DNA of 64,000 nt from Macrostomum hystrix. Taxonomy: Eukaryota; Animalia; Platyhelminthes. The stretch lies in NCBI GenBank assembly GCA_950097015.1, contig CATNEN010000030.1, positions 3,844,001 through 3,908,000 of the forward strand, read 5' to 3'. The stretch's first letter is position 1. The number at the start of each line of letters is the position of its first letter. The position numbers were made by a program, and so were the translations under genes. Shown here piece by piece: positions 40,316 through 51,100 of this stretch. The notes beneath the pieces are model-generated. The model saw only the letters and a list, made by a program, of their open reading frames with translations, was not told where the DNA came from and ran no database searches.

Positions 40316-42626
40316 GAGAAGCCCAGCGAACTAACAATGTTGTTGTCATTTTTTGTGGTTAGCTTCGTTTGATAAATTGGTTTTGAATTTGTGCGAAAAA
40401 ATGTTAAAATTGACACTCAATACTAGATTTTTTTTTTATGTCTGAATTTAGACTGCGAAAAATTGAAATTATTAACAAATATTTTCGCGCCAATTTAAAA
40501 CTATTTTTACTTGACGAATGTTAAACGTGGCCCAATGCGTTATCATCAAACATAGGTCAGTTGCCAGCTGTTTCTAAGAAAAAATTGAAGTGTAGCCAGA
40601 CTCCGACCGCAACTGTTGTGTTGCCAAGCAACCTGCTGTGCAAACTGAGATGTGCTGCTGTTGTTGTTTATATTGTTGTATTCTGTGCACTGTTGTCTTT
40701 TTATTTGCTGTCTAGATAAATGTGCTTTGTTGCTTGTCTGGTATGTTTTATTTGCTAATTATCCTTAGTGATTGTTTTTTGTTTAACTTATTATATTAGT
40801 AAGTTACTCAGCTTAAAAAAACTAATTATTTTGAGCGTTGGAGTTTCCCCACAGCGATGAAACTTTTTTCTAATGTTTTGTGCTAAAATTTATTTGCTTT
40901 TGTCCGCACCATATCTCGAATGTTTTAAATCATTTCTCTGCTAACTAAAATATGCTTCTTTGTTTGTGCTGTTCATATTTTTAGATTTCAGTTTTTCATG
41001 CCTAAATAAAAAGTAGCTTAACTTGTTTAACTGCCTACTGGAAGTAGCTGAAGAGCACCCAGAACTTATTGCCTGTTAATATTTAAATTGTTTGTGGTAA
41101 TATTTATATCCAGTCTAAAATAACTTTAATCTGTGTTATCATTCTGGCTTTATATCGAAATGTTTCTAACAATTTTTTGTAAAGAAATAGAGCATAATTG
41201 CTATGCTCTAGAATTGTTTAGCAAACAAATATATTCGCGCACAAGTTTATAGTCGTTGAGCTTTGAATTCGTGTTCTTTGTATAAGTTCTGATTGTTCGT
41301 GCAAAGTTAAACTTGCTTTAATACTACTACTGCTTATTACAACGAGTAGCAACGTTCGGAATAAACATTGTTAACTGTTTTAGAAATGACCAGCGGGCAG
41401 TGAAAGTCGCCTTATTGTGTATGCTTTGTTTGTTTTATTGCTAATTTTAGTTTGAGTTCCTATTTCTTAATAATGTACTTTTTCTTGGCTTCAAATAAAC
41501 ATTAGTTTCAGCTTGCTCACCTGCCTTGTTTCTTATTATTTTAAGATTATTTTAATATCGAATGACTTGCACCATATCAATGGCTGCGCTCAAGTCACTG
41601 TAATAAACCAAAATCCAGCTTTAAAACATATTTGTAGATCGCCTTTTCTTTGACCAGAGATGTCTTAATTAGAGAATTTGTATATTCGCTTTTATGCTGC
41701 TAATTGTCAATAAAATCTTCTGAAGATACAAAGCGTACTGTTTGGTATAGTACGACATTTTTGAACTGTATTTTTATTTTTTAGTTGCTTTCCTCACCCT
41801 TTCTACTGCTATTATATAATGTAAGAACCTTTTTTGCAGAGTTATTACTATTATTGTAATGCAAATTTCACCTTGGTGTTTCGCTCGTGTGATATCCTTC
41901 TCAGTTTTTCTCTCTGTACTGTCAGTATCTTATATCTCTCGATGTGTGTATATTTCGTGTATTTATAATAATATCAGTACAAATATTTGTAACTAAAGTC
42001 TGCAGATTCAATATTAATTCGTATTTCTTAATTTAATTGAATTGCAAGCCCTTTAGCTGTATTAAACTCTGAAACATGAGATGAATCTGAAAATGTGTGC
42101 GCATGCTGTTGAGAAACACAAGGCAGCCTTCCTTCCCTTCACCCCGAGTACAGTTTCTACCTGTTTCTGATTTTATTAGTTTACTAAATAGATTTGACTG
42201 GCTCAAGTTAACCCACCCTAAGCTTGTTTATAGTTCAAAAAAATTTAATTTGCACCCTAAAGTATAACAAAATGAACTCTCGCGAAGGTCTATTACTTTC
42301 TCCAGACTTGTTTGGCACCGATTTAAGTAAATATTTCAAATTATAGCGCTGGGTAGACGCGAGTTGTTTTTTAGCTTGTGTACACATTTGTGTGTTTGCA
42401 TAAATCATTATTAATATTTAACATGACAATACACACGGTTTTTCTTTTAAAGTATCTAAATATAATATTGGTTACGTTGAACTTGAAAGCCTTAAAAACT
42501 CCTTCCATTCGCAACTGCAAACGACTTTCGTCAATTTCCTCAGTGACATCGTACCAGAAAGCTCTGTCAGTAGTATAGCAGCGAAATGAAGGATGGAATA
42601 TGGCCAATCGCGGGAAGAGGATCGGG

Positions 42627-43215
42627 GTTGCTGACAACAGAAGGATCCGGGGAGCTGACAACAGAAGGATGGGGGAGCTGACAACAGAAGGATCGGGGGA
42701 GCTGACAACTGAATGATCGGGGGAGCTGACAACAGAAGGATCGGGGGAGCTGACAACAGAAGGATCGGGGTTGCTGACAACAGAAGGATCCGGGGAGCTG
42801 ACAACAGAAGGATGGGGGAGCTGACAACAGAAGGATCGGGGGAGCTGACAACTGAATGATCGGGGGAGCTGACAACTGAAGGATCGGGGGAGCTGACAAC
42901 AGAAGGATCCGGGGAGCTGACAACAGAAGGATGGGGGAGCTGACAACAGAAGGATCGGGGGAGCTGACAACTGAATGATCGGGGGAGCTGACAACAGAAG
43001 GATCGGGGGAGCTGACAACAGAAGGATCGGGGGAGCTGACAACTGAATGATCGGGGGAGCTGACAACAGAAGGATCGGGGGAGCTGACAACTGAAGGATG
43101 GGGGGGGGGCTGACAATTGAGGGATTGAGATGCTGACAAGACAACTGAAGGATTGAGATGCTGACAAGAAAACTGAAGGATCAGGGGCTGGCAACTGAAG
43201 GATCGAGAGGGAGAT
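42627..43215. repeat. Minisatellite, about 24 bp unit (gctgacaacagaaggatcggggga)
   Basis: Direct reading; degenerate beyond about 43100. Confidence 0.93.
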
Positions 43216-43562: not shown

Positions 43563-46495
43563 TCAGGACCTGGCCATGGCTATGGCGCACACGGCGCTGA
43601 GCTGCAGAAACTCGTCGGCACCGTCGGCGAGGGCCCGGTCGGCCAGGCCGATCTGCTCCAACACGCGCGGCTTCACCCGATCAGTCAGCAGGTGATCGTG
43701 CAGCTGGTTGAGCACCTGCTCACCTGAGTAGCCGTCCAATAGCAGGTCGCGAACAGCCTGGGTGACGGCATCGGTGCGTCGCTGCTCAAGGGCGGCTGTC
43801 AGCACGGCGAAGCGAGCTGGCGGCACAACGCCGGACATTTCGAGAACCAGGCCTACAGTCAGCTCTTGGCCAGGCCCGGCGTACCTGCGACAGATATTAA
43901 ACAGCTGGCACTAAGAATATGCGTAATATCTGCACATGACACAGTCCAGGAATCCTGCATGACACAATCCAGGAATCCTACATGACACAGTCCAGGAATC
44001 ATACATGACACAGTCCAGGAATCCTACATGACACAGTCCAGGAATCCTGCATGACACAGTCCAGGAATCCTACATGACACAGTCCAGGAATCCTGCATGA
44101 CACAGTCCAGGAATCCTACATGACACAATCCAGGAATCCTACATGACACAATCCAGGAATCCTACATGACACAATCCAGGAATCCTACATGACACAATCC
44201 AGGAATCCTGCATGACACAATCCAGGAATTATACATGACACAATCCAGGAATTATACATGACACAATCCAGGAATTATACATGACACAATCCAGGAATTA
44301 TGCATGACACAATCCAGGAATCCTGCATGACACAGTCCAGGAATCCTGCATGACACAGTCCAGGAATCCTACATGACACAATCCAGGAATCCTACATGAC
44401 ACTGTCCAGGAATCCTACATGACACAATCCAGGAATTATACATGACACAATCCAGGAATTATACATGACACAATCCAGGAATTATGCATGACACAATCCA
44501 GGAATCCTGCATGACACAGTCCAGGAATCCTGCATGACACAGTCCAGGAATCCTGCATGACACAGTCCAGGAATCCTGCATGACACAGTCCAGGAATCCT
44601 GCATGACACAGTCCAGGAATCCTGCATGACACAGTCCAGGAATCCTACATGACACAATCCAGGAATCCTACATGACACTGTCCAGGAATCCTACATGACA
44701 CAGTCCAGGAATCATACATGACACAATCCAGGAATCCTACATGACACAATCCAGGAATCCTACATGACACAGTCCAGGAATCCTACATGACACAATCCAG
44801 GAATCCTGCATGACACAGTCCAGGAATCATACATGACACAGTCCAGGAATCATACATGACACAGTCCAGGAATCCTGCATGACACAGTCCAGGAATCCTA
44901 CATGACACAGTCCAGGAATCCTACATGACACAGTCCAGGAATCATACATGACACAGTCCAGGAATCCTACATGACACAGTCCAGGAATCCTGCATGACAC
45001 AGTCCAGGAATCCTACATGACACAGTCCAGGAATCCTGCATGACACAGTCCAGGAATCATACATGACACAATCCAGGAATTATGCATGACACAATCCAGG
45101 AATCCTGCATGACACAGTCCAGGAATCCTGCATGACACAGTCCAGGAATCCTGCATGACACAGTCCAGGAATCCTGCATGACACAGTCCAGGAATCATAC
45201 ATGACACAGTCCAGGAATCCTGCATGACACAGTCCAGGGAATCCATGAAATCCCAAAAATGCTACATAAACATGAGATCGCACATACCTGGCGGCACTGT
45301 GCAGGTAGGTAAGCGCCTTGCGGAGGTCGCCGCCGCTGGCGCCAACCAGAGCCTCCAGGAAGCCGTCGGAGGCGGTCAGCCGTTCGGCGGCGCAGATTTC
45401 GCCGACGCGTCGCAGCAGAGCGACCTCTGGCAGGGGGCGGAATCGAAACTTGGCGCACCGGCTGCTGATTGGCGGTATGATCCGGGAGACGTAGTTGCAG
45501 ATCAGGCAGAACCGGGTGGTTTTGGCGCAAACCTCCATAGTGCGGCGCAGAGCTGACTGCGCGGCAGTCGTCATGTTGTCAGCCTCGTCCAGGATGATTA
45601 GCTTCAGTGGAGGGCACGGCTTTCCGCTGCAGAGGTGGTACAGCACGAAAGTTAATCATGACAAGGGAATGGTTTGCTGTGATTTTTCGGATTCAGGGAC
45701 TCCCGCTATTCAACTCACTCAGGTCGTTTAGCATTAGCCGTTAGCTGGGCGAAGGTTTTCACTTTCTCGCGAATGACGCCAATTCCGCGCTCGTCGGACG
45801 CGTTCAGCTCGAGCAGCCGGTCGCGAAGAAGCTCCGGGCCAAACAGGTCCCTGGAGAAAAGGAGGGATTTGGGATTTACGAAAATCGCTGAAATAGGGCA
45901 GTGTTGCAATGAGCAATAAGAATTGATAGGGTAGGCGCGATACCTCAAGGCACCACTAGAAACGAGTCACGTGATCTTGAAGAGCAGAATTGAGTCACGT
46001 GACCTTGAAGAATAGAATCGAGTCACGTGACCTTGAAGAATAGAATTGAGTCACGTGACCTTGAAGAATAGAATTGAGTCACGTGACCTCGAAGAACAAA
46101 ATCGAGTCACCTGACCTTAAGGAATAGAATCGAATCACGTGACCTTAAGGATGGAATTAAGGCTAGTGACAGAAAATTCAGAAAACGCACGAAAACGACA
46201 GAAAACGCACGTGACAAATAGGTGTTGCAAGGAGCCTAGCTCACCTGGCCAGGGCGAGAGCTGCTGAGGTTTTGCCAGTTCCCGGACTGCCATAGAACAG
46301 CAAATTAGGCAGGTCGGCGCCTTCAACGGCGCACTTTTTCAGCACGGCAACAGCCTCCTCCTGGTGGGAGACATCGTCCAGCGTGGCCGGCCGGTACTTC
46401 TCGACCCAGGGCGTGGGCCGCTTTGCCGAGGATGCGGAGCGCGGCTTGCCGACGGCTTCCGACTTCGGGCCGGCGTAGTTGAGAAGAAAGTTCTC
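43563..46495 (-). CDS. RFC4: Replication factor C subunit 4 (RFC37/Rfc2 type); join(46495..46245, 45850..45719, 45626..45288, 43884..43563), 347 aa plus a missing initiator Met
   Basis: PWVEKYRP, Walker [49 protein letters not shown] motif [16 protein letters not shown]. All three introns are GT-AG and phase-2 consistent. No ATG in frame before the first acceptor. Confidence 0.93.
43935..45240. repeat. Intronic minisatellite, 23 bp unit (catgacacagtccaggaatcct[a/g]), filling RFC4 intron 3
   Basis: Direct reading, about 56 copies. Confidence 0.97.
45964..46150. repeat. Short 28-bp tandem array with a GTCACGTGAC palindrome in RFC4 intron 1
   Basis: About 7 units of gagtcacgtgaccttgaagaatagaat[t/c]. 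Confidence 0.9.
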
Positions 46496-46513
46496 CTGGA
46501 AGCGATTGAAAGT

Positions 46514-47597
46514 TGGGATGATGGACTCAACTAGTGTCAGGCTATTGGAGTAGGGATGATGGACTCAACTAGTGTCAGGCTATTGGAGTAGGGATGATGG
46601 ACTCAACTAGTGTCAGGCTATTGCAGTAGGGATGATGGACTCAACTAGTGTCAGGCTATTGGAGTAGGGATGATGGACTCAACTAGTGTCAGGCTATTGG
46701 AGTAGGGATGATGGACTCAACTAGTGTCAGGCTATTGGAGTAGGGATGATGGACTCAACTAGTGTCAGGCTATTGGAGTAGGGATGATGGACTCAACTAG
46801 TGTCAGGCTATTGGAGTAGGGATGATGGACTGAACTAGTGTCAGGCTATTGGAGTAGGGATGATGGACTCAACTAGTGTCAGGCTATTGGAGTAGGGATG
46901 ATGGACTGAACTAGTGTCAGGCTATTGGAGTAGGGATGATGGACCCAACTAGTGTCAGGCAATTGGAGTAGGGATGATGGACTGAACTAGAGTCAGGCTA
47001 TTGGAGTAGGGATGATGGACTCAACTAGTGTCAGGCTATTGGAGTAGGGATGATGGACTGAACTAGAGTCAGGCTATTGAAGTAGGGATGATGGACTCAA
47101 CTAGTGTCAGGCTATTGGAGTAGGGATGATGGACCCAACTAGTGTCAGGCTATTGGAGTAGGGATGATGGACTGAACTAGAGTCAGGCTATTGGAGTAGG
47201 GATGATGGACTCAACTAGTGTCAGGCTATTGGAGTAGGGATGATGGACTCAACTAGAGTCAGGCTATTGGAGTAGGGATGATGGACTCAACTAGTGTCAG
47301 GCTATTGGAGTAGGGATGATGCACTCAACTAGTGTCAGGCTATTGGAGTCGGGATGATGGACTCAACTAGTGTCAGGCTATTGGAGTAGGGATGATGGAC
47401 TCAACTAGTGTCAGGCTATTGGAGTCGGGATGATGGACTCAACTAGTGTCAGGCTATTGGAGTAGGGATGATGGACTCAACTAGAGTCAGGCTATTGGAG
47501 TAGGGATGATGGACTCAACTAGTGTCAGGCTATTGGAGTAGGGATGATGGACTCAACTAGTGTCAGGCTATTGGAGTAGGGATGATGGACCCTACTA
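46514..47597. repeat. Minisatellite, 38 bp unit (gtagggatgatggactcaactagtgtcaggctattgga), about 28 copies
   Basis: Direct reading; lies between CNDP2 and the RFC4 acceptor. Confidence 0.97.
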
Positions 47598-48193
47598 GTT
47601 TTTCGGATATTGAAGTTGGGCTATTAGATAATTTAAAGACTAAATAAAAAATAAGCGAGGAATAAGTAGCTGTTTATGAGCATGGATTCTGAAATGAAAT
47701 TATTGATTTATTTAATTGGCAAACGGGGATACCTATAAAATCGAAAAACGGTTATCCTAATTGACTAATTTCATATTGGTCAGAAAACGATCGCTCATTA
47801 AATTGGCGTACCGAAAACAAAATTTGGAGCAGAAAGATCGGTTTAGGGTAAAGATCTTGGATAATAAATAAAAAATTACAGTGCAGAAAAACACCTGCAT
47901 CATTACTGACAATAGTAACGGAAAACGATTCAAACACCGGTTTTAATTAAAAAAAAGTTGAAAATCGAACCTTGTAATTAGCCAAAAAAGATAAGAAGTT
48001 GAACTGAATTCTTGAATAGTCATTGTTGGATAAAGTTAAACAAACAAAAATGACCATGATTAAAAATTGTTAGGACTAAAACAAAGGATTTATGAACTAG
48101 TGTTATCATAGTGAATCTGTATTTCTAGACAATCATAATGGAATTCAATAAACGTCACACTGCGATCAACTCATTGTAAACTGCGACTCAAAA

Positions 48194-51100
48194 TCACATC
48201 TGGCCAATCTCGTACAGATAGGCAGCCATCAGCTTGGTGCCCTGAATGTAGTTCCGCTTGGACAGCTTCTCATTCTGGCTGTGCGCGCCATCGTCAGCCT
48301 GGCCCATCGGCAGCAGCAGCACATTCTTGCCAGTGTTCTCCTGCAGGCTCAGCGTCACCGGGATGCTGCCGCCCTCGCGAGTCATGTCCGGCTCAACGCC
48401 GTAGACAGTCTTGGTGGCCTTGGCGGCCGCCTGATAGTGCGGGTGATTGAAGCTGCTGAACCAGTGCCGGCCGCCGTGAAATGGAGTGATGCGGCACTGG
48501 TTGGGGCTTGAGCGCTCGCGAAACAGGCGCTCGCAGTAGGCCACGACTTTGGCGTTAATCTCCTCAGGCGTCTGGTTGGGCACAATGCGAATGCTGAATT
48601 TGCCAATGACCCGACGAGGAATCACCGTCTTGGCGCCTTCGCCATAGAACGCTCCCTCGATGCCGTGAACGCTGAGCGACGGGAAGCGCCAGCGATGCTG
48701 CAAAGTCTTGGCCTGAAAGCAATTTGGTAGGCTTATTTAAAGATCATAGACAAATAATTAGGACCTGCAAAAGGCTGTTGAATACAATGGGCCGCGCAGT
48801 ATGACGGAGGACAAAGCTGAATGATTATAAGTGACGGAGGACAAAAGCTGAATGATTATAAGTGACGGAGGACAAAAGCTGAATGATTATAAGTGACGGA
48901 GGACCAAAGCTGAATGATTATAAGTGACGGAGGACCAAAGCTGAATGATTATAAGTGACGGAGGACAAAGCTGAATGATAATAAGTGACGGAGGACAAAG
49001 CTGAATGATTATAAGTGACGGAGGACAAATCTGAATGATTATAAGTGACGGACGACCAAAGCTGAATGATTATAAGTGACGGAGGACCAAAGCTGAATGA
49101 TTATAAGTGACGGAGGACCAAAGCTGAATGATAATAAGTGATGGAGGACAAAGCTGAATGATTATAAGTGACGGAGGACCAAAGCTGAATGATAATAAGT
49201 GATGGAGGACCAAAGCTGAATGATAATAAGTGATGGAGGACCAAAGCTGAATGATAATAAGTGATGGAGGACCAAAGCTGAATGATAATAAGTGATGGAG
49301 GACCAAAGCTGAAATTTCTTAAGTGTGACGGAGGAGCTGAAGGATTTTACTTCCTTAAGAGGATGAAAAGTTAAGGACAAAAATGAGCATGTAAATAAAC
49401 ACTAGGTAAAAAGCTATCTACCTTGGAGTCGTGCAACAGACCGTGAAGTCCATTGTCGGCCTTGAATTCTTCAACATCAAAGTCCATCTTATCGTAGAGA
49501 GCCTCCTCGTCGGCGGTCAGAGGGTCCACATTCTCATCAATACCGTCGATTAGGATGCGGCCATCCTTATCAGCTAGGCGGCCCAGGAACCAGACCAGGT
49601 CGTTCATGGCCTCGGGCACAGAGCCGCCGAACACGCCGCTGTGCAGGTCCTTGGCGGCGCAGCTGACCTCCAAGAAGAAATAGCAGATGCCGCGCAGGCC
49701 GTAGGTCAGGCACGGCTTGTCCTTGCCCAGCCAATAGTTGTCGCTGATGCAGACCAGGTCGACGCCCTTCAGGAAGCCGTCCCGCTCCTTAACCAGCAGA
49801 TCGTCGAGGCCTTCAGAGCCGCTCTCTTCCATGGCCTCCAGGCAGAATTTCAGGTTCACCGGCAGATCGACACCCTCCTAAGAATATAGCAAGCACTGAC
49901 TTGAAGACGCCTACTTATAACATTGACCTCAGGAAATTGGTCCCCGAGTTCGAATCCTCGACGAGGCCGAATTACAAAGAAAAAGAAAAAGTTGGGAGGC
50001 TTGTTGTGCAACTTAGGCACATAAAGATCACCTCTAAAGCAGGGGTCGGCAAACTTATTAGCTAGCGGGCCGAAGAGACAACCTAAAAGACGACCGCGGG
50101 CCGCATTGACTGTAGAAATATCGGATAGGGGAGAGATAGGACAGTGAAGAGATGAAAGGGGGAGATTAGACACGGGAGAGACGAGACCGAGGGGAGATGA
50201 GACAGGGGAAAGATGAGACAGGATACTGTAGGCGTCGAAAGGGGGCAACAAGGCCGGATTTGGTAACTTCGAGGGCCGCATCTGGCCCGCGGGCCGGAGT
50301 TTGCCGACCCGAGCTCTAGAGCAGCGATATTTTGTACCCGCGTAACGTATCCATGTGAGTGAGTGTGCTCAGGGTCACAGAAATAGACGGAATTGCCTCC
50401 TCGCTGGCTGCGGGTCGACTGTAGCCTAACTATGCGCCAGAGACCCAGGCCGCCACAACCTCAGAATCTTATTGGTAAGGTCCTGAGTTCAATACCGACA
50501 GTCAGCCACTTGCACTAGACGCACCTCCTTGTAGGCCTCGATGGCGTTAACCCAGCCCAGCACGGGTCCCTTGTCGTCGCTGGATCCGCGGCCGTACAAA
50601 TTGCCATTGCGCTCGGTTAGCTCAAACGGCTCCGTGTCCCAGCCGTCCTCCTTGATGGCCGGCTGCACGTCCAGGTGGCCGTAGACCAGTAGGGTCTTCT
50701 TGTTGGCGCTATCGGAAGCGCTTGGTAGGTCGGCCAGCAGACAGGGCGGCAGTGGAAGCGTCGTGCCGTCCGGCAGCTTCTGAAAGAACAAAGACTTATA
50801 ATGTGTACATTTGCCAAGTTGATGTCGTATCCTCAAATTATTTAGGCGTATTTTTATTAATAAATATATACAATCCAATGATCCTATGTCCAAAATCTTC
50901 AATCCTAGATCCAATGTCCAAAATCTTCAATCCTAGATCTAATGTCTTTCATAATTTTTATTATTTTATCTAGCCTATTCCAAGTCAGATTAGGATTTCG
51001 CACCTGGTCACCCAGTGGCGCTAGACGAACAGTGGCGCCCAGAGCTTTCAATTGATCAGCGGCCCGTTCAACCATGCGCACAACTTCTGGGCGATGATCG

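What the first reader, a model, noticed from the sequence alone, without database searches (positions are those of the whole stretch)
46245..46530. RFC4 has no initiator ATG: the reading frame begins exactly at a splice acceptor, suggesting the spliced-leader AUG supplies Met1
Seen: the minus strand reads ...actttcaatcgcttccag|GAG AAC TTT CTT CTC (ENFLL...), directly downstream of a 1.1-kb satellite whose minus strand has no ATG. I found no convincing ATG-containing phase-0 donor exon up to CNDP2, only a weak ATG|gtcatt at 48057-48053. Known: flatworm spliced leaders end in AUG, which can act as the initiator, and RFC4 orthologues begin M-x-x-F-L (human MQAFLK). Inference: SL-AUG plus ENFL gives M-E-N-F-L, so this essential replication gene would depend on trans-splicing to be translated.
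Basis: partly seen in the sequence, partly recalled or inferred. Interest (0 to 1): 0.75.

Follow-up and report, generated by a model that had tools for sequence, protein, structure and literature searches.

The report
Spliced leader supplies RFC4 start codon
In this Macrostomum flatworm the replication gene RFC4 has no start codon of its own, and assembled RNA shows the trans-spliced leader, which ends in AUG, joined in frame directly before codon 2; this is one more confirmed case of a mechanism already known in flatworms.

Summary

- **Gene:** an RFC4 orthologue lies on the minus strand in four exons: 46495-46245, 45850-45719, 45626-45288 and 43884-43563.
- **No genomic start:** exon 1 begins directly after a TTCCAG acceptor and encodes ENFLLNY... 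with no Met. An in-frame TGA lies 24 codons upstream. The minus strand has no ATG for about 1.18 kb upstream. The first genomic in-frame ATG (45574) lies after both Walker motifs.
- **RNA evidence:** spliced contigs from two runs, 100% identical to the window, carry 22 extra bases at their 5' end. With the shared G at 46496 these read GCGAAGACTCAATTTATTGCATG, the last 23 nt of the published 35-nt Macrostomum spliced leader. The leader is joined to 46495, giving AUG-GAG-AAC-UUU-CUU.
- **Not a cis exon:** this leader sequence occurs nowhere in the 64-kb window.
- **Orthologues:** metazoan RFC4 proteins start M-[E/D/Q]-x-F-L, so exactly one codon is missing. A trematode orthologue has ATG GAG ACC TTT in its genome.

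Translation from the leader AUG is inferred, not shown. The mechanism was described by Cheng et al. (2006, J Biol Chem) in schistosomes. Earlier notes of this scan report the same pattern on other DNA of this genome (NDUFA5, SFMBT, SIRT6, POLR3K). This is a new member of a known kind, of modest interest.

The parts
46496..46501 (-). SL trans-splice acceptor TTCCAG, with the AG at 46497-46496. It matches the published Macrostomum trans-splice acceptor motif [T/C]TNCAG.
   Evidence: Sequence. Contig pieces end at 46496 and continue into the SL tail. Motif from PMC8629364.
46245..46495 (-). RFC4 exon 1 (251 nt). It covers codons 2-84 (ENFLL...ALALA) plus 2 nt, has no Met, and contains WVEKYRP and Walker A (GSPGTGKT).
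   Evidence: (joint 46244/45849, GT..AG).
46565..46567 (-). In-frame TGA 24 codons upstream of exon 1. It closes the frame inside the satellite, with no ATG in between.
46511..47599 (.). 38-bp satellite of 28.7 copies (96% matches) in the presumed outron or intercistronic region. Its minus strand contains no ATG.
45851..46244 (-). Intron 1 (394 nt, GT..AG). It contains a 28-bp x 7.2 array (45957-46157) with four perfect GTCACGTGAC palindromes.
   Evidence: (joint in X5 and X6).
45719..45850 (-). RFC4 exon 2 (132 nt), encoding ...[43 protein letters not shown]...
45288..45626 (-). RFC4 exon 3 (339 nt). It holds Walker B (ILDEAD), the SRC arginine-finger motif and the lid domain. The first genomic in-frame ATG is at 45574-45572.
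   Evidence: Pfam DNA_pol3_delta2 3.1e-08 and RCF1-5-like_lid 4e-08.
43885..45287 (-). Intron 3 (GTATGT...CAG), almost entirely a 23-bp x 57 tandem array (43934-45244).
   Evidence: Loose end at 45285, which maps to 43852-43881..
43563..43884 (-). RFC4 exon 4 coding part, including the stop TGA at 43565-43563. It encodes the Rep_fac_C domain. The 3' UTR runs on to about 43324, just after AATAAA.
   Evidence: Pfam Rep_fac_C 5.8e-14. Human RFC4 residues 254-357, E 5e-15. Contig lengths.
48194..48196 (-). Stop codon of the upstream same-strand CNDP2-like gene. It lies 1,698 nt from the RFC4 acceptor, or 609 nt after subtracting the satellite.

Best explanation
RFC4 in this Macrostomum genome is an SL-AUG-dependent gene. 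Its pre-mRNA is made either from its own promoter or as the downstream part of a CNDP2-RFC4 transcript. That pre-mRNA has an outron ending in the acceptor TTCCAG at 46496. The spliceosome joins the 35-nt spliced leader, which ends in AUG, to base 46495. The mature mRNA therefore starts ...UUAUUGCAUG|GAGAACUUUCUU, and the leader's AUG is the only AUG before codon 146. Translation from it gives a 348-residue RFC4 whose N-terminus, M-E-N-F-L, matches the conserved metazoan M-[E/D/Q]-x-F-L. Shown here: the SL-exon 1 junction, the frame, the lack of any genomic start, and the gene model. Inferred: that ribosomes initiate at the SL AUG, and therefore that a functional RFC4 can only be made from trans-spliced mRNA.
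For: -: contigs of runs X5 and X6 are 100% identical to the window and spliced at GT..AG introns, so they derive from RNA. Both end 5' with ATGCAATAAATTGAGTCTTCGC on the + strand, just beyond 46496.
- this tail is an exact match to the 3' part of the published SL.
- the 23-mer is absent from the whole window even with 3 mismatches allowed, so it is not a cis exon within 17.5 kb upstream.
- there is no Met in exons 1-2, an in-frame stop lies 24 codons upstream, and the first genomic in-frame ATG is at 45574, after Walker A and Walker B.
- 42 of 102 homologous N-terminal fragments start MxxF[LFIM], and the window's E-N-F-L aligns to residues 2-5.
- each exon scores as RFC4, and the ORF is intact.
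- the acceptor fits the published motif [T/C]TNCAG, and 85% of M. lignano neoblast genes are reported as SL trans-spliced.
- papers citing Cheng et al. 2006 report that the flatworm SL AUG serves as initiator in vivo and that more than 40 S. mansoni cDNAs require it.
Against: - There is no direct evidence of translation: no Ribo-seq and no N-terminal peptide.
- The RNA evidence is assembled contigs from one study (two samples), not raw reads. Minor isoforms with a different 5' end would be dropped.
- The run kind is not on record. RNA origin is inferred from the precise removal of three GT..AG introns.
- The third informative run (X2) did not reach the 5' end.
Confidence: 0.9

Rival explanations
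1. A cis-spliced upstream exon carrying its own ATG (for example ATG|gtcatt at 48057, or an exon further upstream) is joined to the same acceptor in a significant share of transcripts. Under this reading the SL form is only one isoform.
For: An ATG followed by GT exists at 48057. Flatworm acceptors are reported to be shared between cis- and trans-splicing (PMC12582326). Contigs drop rare variants.
Against: Both contigs that reach the 5' end carry the SL and no cis exon. The donor gtcatt is far from the GT[G/A]AG consensus. It lies only 137 nt after the CNDP2 stop, probably within that gene's 3' UTR.
Confidence: 0.05
2. Translation starts at an internal AUG or at a non-AUG codon, and the SL AUG is not used.
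For: None specific. [quoted passage not shown]
Against: The first genomic in-frame ATG is codon 146, after WVEKYRP, Walker A and Walker B, so the product could not be a working clamp-loader subunit. The SL AUG is the first AUG of the mRNA and is in frame. The conserved residues 2-5 (E-N-F-L) would have no reason to be kept.
Confidence: 0.02
3. This copy is a decaying paralogue or pseudogene that lost its start codon, and another copy elsewhere in the genome supplies RFC4.
For: Macrostomum genomes contain duplicated genes (PMC10468722). Other copies could not be searched with these tools.
Against: The 347-codon frame is intact, with all motifs and correct GT..AG introns. It is transcribed, spliced and SL-capped in two samples at contig depth 22-35.
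Confidence: 0.03

Closest known systems
Flatworm SL 3'-terminal AUG used as initiator methionine (Cheng, Cohen, Ndegwa & Davis 2006, J Biol Chem 281:733; described for Schistosoma, extended to Echinococcus in PMC3510090)
   Same: The SL ends in AUG. It is joined directly in frame to codon 2 of a conserved protein that has no genomic start, and the N-terminus then matches the orthologues.
   Different: A different flatworm lineage (free-living Macrostomorpha) and a different gene (RFC4). No paper in the searchable library links RFC4 to the SL. Translation was not tested here.
SL trans-splicing in Macrostomum lignano, M. cliftonense and M. hystrix (Ustyantsev & Berezikov 2021, PMC8629364; Wiberg et al. 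2023, PMC10468722)
   Same: Identical SL 3' sequence. The acceptor matches [T/C]TNCAG. RFC4 is a conserved proliferation gene, a class reported to be enriched among trans-spliced neoblast genes.
   Different: Those papers count trans-spliced genes and note that the SL probably ends in a start codon. In the passages read they do not list genes that depend on it.
slORFs in nematodes, ascidians and euglenozoans (slORFfinder, PMC9851317)
   Same: A start codon is donated by the spliced leader.
   Different: Those cases mostly involve non-AUG (NUG) codons and new or alternative ORFs. Here a canonical AUG restores the ancestral Met1 of a conserved protein.
RFC4 (human) / Rfc2 (yeast) clamp-loader small subunit
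   Same: The best PDB matches for both the N-terminal and C-terminal exons are human RFC4. Walker A, DEAD, SRC, the lid and Rep_fac_C are all present.
   Different: About 15 residues shorter than human RFC4 in the N-terminal linker, and Met1 is not genome-encoded.

Membership tests
SL-AUG-initiated flatworm mRNAs (Cheng et al. 2006) | The mature mRNA carries the species' spliced leader at its 5' end. | tested here: met
   A 22-nt tail plus the shared G on two contigs equals the last 23 nt of the published SL. The sequence is absent from the window.
SL-AUG-initiated flatworm mRNAs (Cheng et al. 2006) | The SL ends in AUG, and that AUG is in frame with the main ORF with no intervening stop. | tested here: met
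   The junction reads ...TTGCATG|GAGAACTTT. The frame runs uninterrupted through the four exons to TGA at 43565.
SL-AUG-initiated flatworm mRNAs (Cheng et al. 2006) | No genomic AUG can give the conserved N-terminus. | tested here: met
   There is an in-frame stop 24 codons upstream with no ATG between, and the first in-frame genomic ATG is codon 146.
SL-AUG-initiated flatworm mRNAs (Cheng et al. 2006) | Alignment with orthologues places Met1 at the SL AUG. | tested here: met
   Orthologues start MEAFLK, MDAFLK, MQAFLK or METFLA. The window's ENFLL aligns at residues 2-6.
SL-AUG-initiated flatworm mRNAs (Cheng et al. 2006) | Translation demonstrably initiates at the SL AUG. | not testable with these tools
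   This needs Ribo-seq, N-terminal proteomics or a reporter assay.
RFC4 orthologue (RFC small subunit, AAA+ clamp loader) | Closer to RFC4/yeast Rfc2 than to the other RFC small subunits. | tested here: met
   Exon 1: human RFC4 E 1.9e-22, against RFC5 8e-13 and RFC2 3e-10. Exon 4: human RFC4 5e-15, with yeast Rfc2 next at 1e-4.
RFC4 orthologue (RFC small subunit, AAA+ clamp loader) | Walker A, Walker B (DEAD), the SRC motif, the lid domain and the Rep_fac_C domain. | tested here: met
   GSPGTGKT in exon 1. ILDEAD and SSRC in exon 3. Pfam RCF1-5-like_lid 4e-08 and Rep_fac_C 5.8e-14.
Macrostomum operon (Ustyantsev & Berezikov 2021 criterion) | Same-strand neighbours, downstream gene SL trans-spliced, repeat-adjusted intergenic distance under 1 kb. 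| tested here: inconclusive
   The CNDP2 stop is 1,698 nt from the RFC4 acceptor. Subtracting the 1,089-nt satellite leaves 609 nt, which meets the distance rule. Co-transcription was not tested.

The most novel reading that the evidence does not exclude
CNDP2 and RFC4 form a two-gene operon whose intercistronic spacer was expanded by a 1.1-kb ATG-free satellite. The AATAAA at 47712 would leave only about 100 nt of non-repeat spacer. Dependence on the SL AUG would also be a widespread, selectively maintained feature of Macrostomum housekeeping and proliferation genes, coupling their translation obligatorily to trans-splicing. Earlier scan notes list at least 11 candidate genes in this genome.
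Probability: 0.3. Interest if true: 0.45.

Novelty: new member of a known kind. Interest (0 to 1): 0.27.

Why it matters
**Annotation:** gene finders that require a genomic ATG will truncate this essential clamp-loader gene or call it partial, and other genes like it. Models for Macrostomum genomes should allow a start of "SL-AUG + acceptor".

**Biology:** production of a working RFC4 would depend entirely on SL trans-splicing. This fits the reported enrichment of trans-splicing among stem-cell (neoblast) genes and offers a simple test case for translational dependence on the SL in a transgenic flatworm model. The mechanism itself has been known since 2006, so the gain is incremental.

Tried and rejected
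- **Cis exon in the window:** I searched the window for the leader 23-mer with up to 3 mismatches and found nothing. The leader is therefore not a cis exon in the 17.5 kb upstream. No SL RNA gene or other Rfam family lies in the window.
- **Upstream ATGs:** I listed every minus-strand ATG between CNDP2 and the acceptor. Only 48057 is followed by GT, its donor is weak, and the contigs do not use it.
- **Comparative Macrostomum 5' ends:** the word-index protein search with exon 1 returned no near-identical Macrostomum fragment (best 69% identity). Comparative 5' ends from other Macrostomum species could not be obtained. Full-length relatives lie outside the tool's length window for an 83-aa query.
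- **Joined model not searched:** the four-exon protein has no reference, so it was neither searched nor folded. Every search was done exon by exon by reference.
- **Runs X1 and X2:** X1 laid nothing on the stretch. X2 covered only exons 1-2 and not the 5' end.
- **Stretch laid:** Transcription of the satellite and the intercistronic region was therefore not examined.
- **Literature:** a search for RFC4 together with spliced leader found no paper.

Full report
**Observation**

On the minus strand the sequence reads ...caactttcaatcgcttccag|GAGAACTTTCTTCTC. The AG lies at 46497-46496 and the first exon base is 46495.

Bases 46495-46245 translate as [83 protein letters not shown]. That is 83 codons with no methionine.

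Extending the frame upstream meets TGA at 46567-46565 after 24 codons, with no ATG in between. The nearest minus-strand ATG of any frame is at 47683. The gap is explained by a 38-bp satellite of 28.7 copies at 46511-47599, whose minus-strand unit has no ATG.

The same-strand gene upstream ends ...[35 protein letters not shown] at 48196-48194. Its other open stretches look like an M20 dipeptidase of the CNDP2 type.

**Gene identity and model**

Exon 1 best matches human RFC4 residues 33-91 (E 1.9e-22). Yeast Rfc2, its orthologue, comes next, and the other RFC small subunits score clearly lower.

The RNA contigs laid on 45280-46540 define these introns:

| Intron | Coordinates | Length / ends |
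|---|---|---|
| 1 | 46244-45851 | 394 nt, GT..AG |
| 2 | 45718-45627 | 92 nt, GT..AG |
| 3 | donor at 45287; the loose end maps to 43852-43881, giving the acceptor AG at 43886-43885 | - |

The resulting exons are:

| Exon | Coordinates | Length |
|---|---|---|
| 1 | 46495-46245 | 251 nt |
| 2 | 45850-45719 | 132 nt |
| 3 | 45626-45288 | 339 nt |
| 4 | 43884-43563 | 322 nt, including TGA |

Together they make 1,044 nt, which is 347 sense codons plus the stop.

Scanned piece by piece, exon 3 hits DNA_pol3_delta2 and the RFC lid domain, and exon 4 hits Rep_fac_C (5.8e-14). Exon 4 matches human RFC4 residues 254-357.

Walker A (GSPGTGKT), Walker B (ILDEAD) and the SRC motif are all present. The first in-frame genomic ATG is at 45574-45572, codon 146, after both Walker motifs. 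A protein started there could not be a functional clamp-loader subunit.

**RNA evidence**

The single run search returned four runs of one 2020 study that hold half the sampled words, and four weaker 2024 runs.

Laying X5, X6, X1 and X2 on 45280-46540 gave one contig each from X5 (1,306 nt) and X6 (1,278 nt). Both are 100% identical to the window and lack all three introns, so they derive from spliced RNA.

Both contigs stop matching the genome at 46496 and continue for 22 letters to their own end. On the + strand these letters are ATGCAATAAATTGAGTCTTCGC, which is GCGAAGACTCAATTTATTGCAT on the mRNA strand.

The G at 46496 is shared between the acceptor AG and the leader's final G. The mRNA therefore reads GCGAAGACTCAATTTATTGCATG|GAGAACTTT.

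The published 35-nt Macrostomum lignano spliced leader is CGGTCTCTTACTGCGAAGACTCAATTTATTGCATG (PMC8629364), so the tail is its last 23 nt exactly. The SL is reported to be highly conserved in M. cliftonense and M. hystrix (PMC10468722).

The 23-mer does not occur in the window even with three mismatches. It is therefore not a cis exon within 17.5 kb upstream.

A 22-nt tail is also what a k=31 de Bruijn assembly should leave before it branches into the shared leader. That point is my inference.

The acceptor TTCCAG fits the published trans-splice acceptor motif [T/C]TNCAG.

**Is Met1 really the only missing codon?**

Of 102 short RFC4-like N-terminal fragments found with exon 1, 42 start MxxF[LFIM]. 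These include nearly all of the best hits (MEAFLK, MDAFLK, MQAFLK).

In the alignment the window's E-N-F-L sits under residues 2-5 of the orthologues, and WVEKYRP falls at the usual distance.

The trematode Dicrocoelium dendriticum encodes METFLAAF... with a genomic ATG GAG ACC TTT (L001 at 3002). An unidentified AT-rich organism encodes ATG GAA GCC TTT (L002). The genomic ATG is thus the common state, and this Macrostomum gene has handed that codon to the leader.

**Mechanism**

Shown here:
- SL trans-splicing at 46495.
- The SL AUG in frame with the ORF.
- No genomic alternative start.

Inferred:
- Initiation at the SL AUG, which would give a 348-residue RFC4.
- Consequently, obligatory dependence of RFC4 synthesis on trans-splicing.

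The inference rests on precedent. Cheng et al. 2006 is cited as showing that the flatworm SL AUG can serve as initiator in vivo, that it is in frame in 28% of S. mansoni trans-spliced mRNAs, and that more than 40 cDNAs require it (PMC9851317). In E. granulosus, 10 of 15 orthologues of such genes keep the arrangement (PMC3510090).

**Origin of the pre-mRNA**

The distance from the CNDP2 stop to the acceptor is 1,698 nt, or 609 nt after subtracting the satellite. This is under the 1-kb repeat-adjusted threshold that Ustyantsev and Berezikov used to call operons.

Poly(A) signals lie at 47947, 47716 and 47712. If the last one serves CNDP2, only about 100 nt of non-repeat spacer would remain. An operon is therefore possible but untested.

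**Rivals**

- **Cis-spliced ATG exon (for example ATG|gtcatt at 48057).** It is not seen in either contig and has a poor donor. It cannot be excluded as a minor isoform, because contigs drop rare forms.
- **Internal or non-AUG initiation.** This would remove the ATPase core or ignore the first, in-frame AUG of the mRNA.
- **Pseudogene.** This is contradicted by the intact frame, the conserved motifs, the correct splicing and the expression.

**Comparison and novelty**

This gene meets every testable defining feature of the known class of flatworm mRNAs initiated at the SL AUG.

No paper in the library links RFC4 with the spliced leader. The Macrostomum papers I read note only that the SL probably ends in a start codon.

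Earlier notes of this scan report the same arrangement on other pieces of this genome for NDUFA5, SFMBT, SIRT6 and POLR3K, plus further unchecked candidates. One of those notes names the species as Macrostomum hystrix. I did not verify those notes or the species.

The finding is real and well supported. It is one more example of a known mechanism.

**Limits**

- The RNA evidence is assembled contigs from one study, not raw reads.
- The joined four-exon protein has no reference, so it was neither searched nor folded.

Noticed in passing
window 46210-46244 (minus strand): The X2 contig (labelled as a different organism but 100% identical to the window) joins 45849 to 46210 instead of 46244. This uses an alternative donor (cac|gtgcgt) that lengthens exon 1 by 34 nt and shifts the frame. 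It is probably a non-productive isoform.
   Followed up: no
window 45957-46157: Intron 1 of RFC4 holds a 28-bp x 7.2 tandem array with four perfect copies of the palindrome GTCACGTGAC. This is an E-box of the CLEAR/USF/Myc type. The window has 5 copies in total, against 0.04 expected by chance.
   Followed up: partly
window 43934-45244: Intron 3 of RFC4 is almost entirely a 23-bp x 57 tandem array (94% matches). It is open in all three frames and mimics long ORFs ([22 protein letters not shown]...).
   Followed up: partly
window 42618-43105: A 24-bp x 20.5 tandem array lies just downstream of the RFC4 3' end and gives long artefactual ORFs (SAPPILLLSAPP...).
   Followed up: no
window 46496-48196: CNDP2 and RFC4 are same-strand neighbours. 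After subtracting the 38-bp satellite the gap is 609 nt, under the published 1-kb operon criterion. AATAAA/ATTAAA signals lie at 47712, 47716 and 47947.
   Followed up: partly
L001 2985-3004 (Dicrocoelium dendriticum): The trematode RFC4 orthologue keeps a genomic ATG. A ttttcag acceptor-like site lies 10 nt upstream, and an SL AUG joined there would be out of frame.
   Followed up: no
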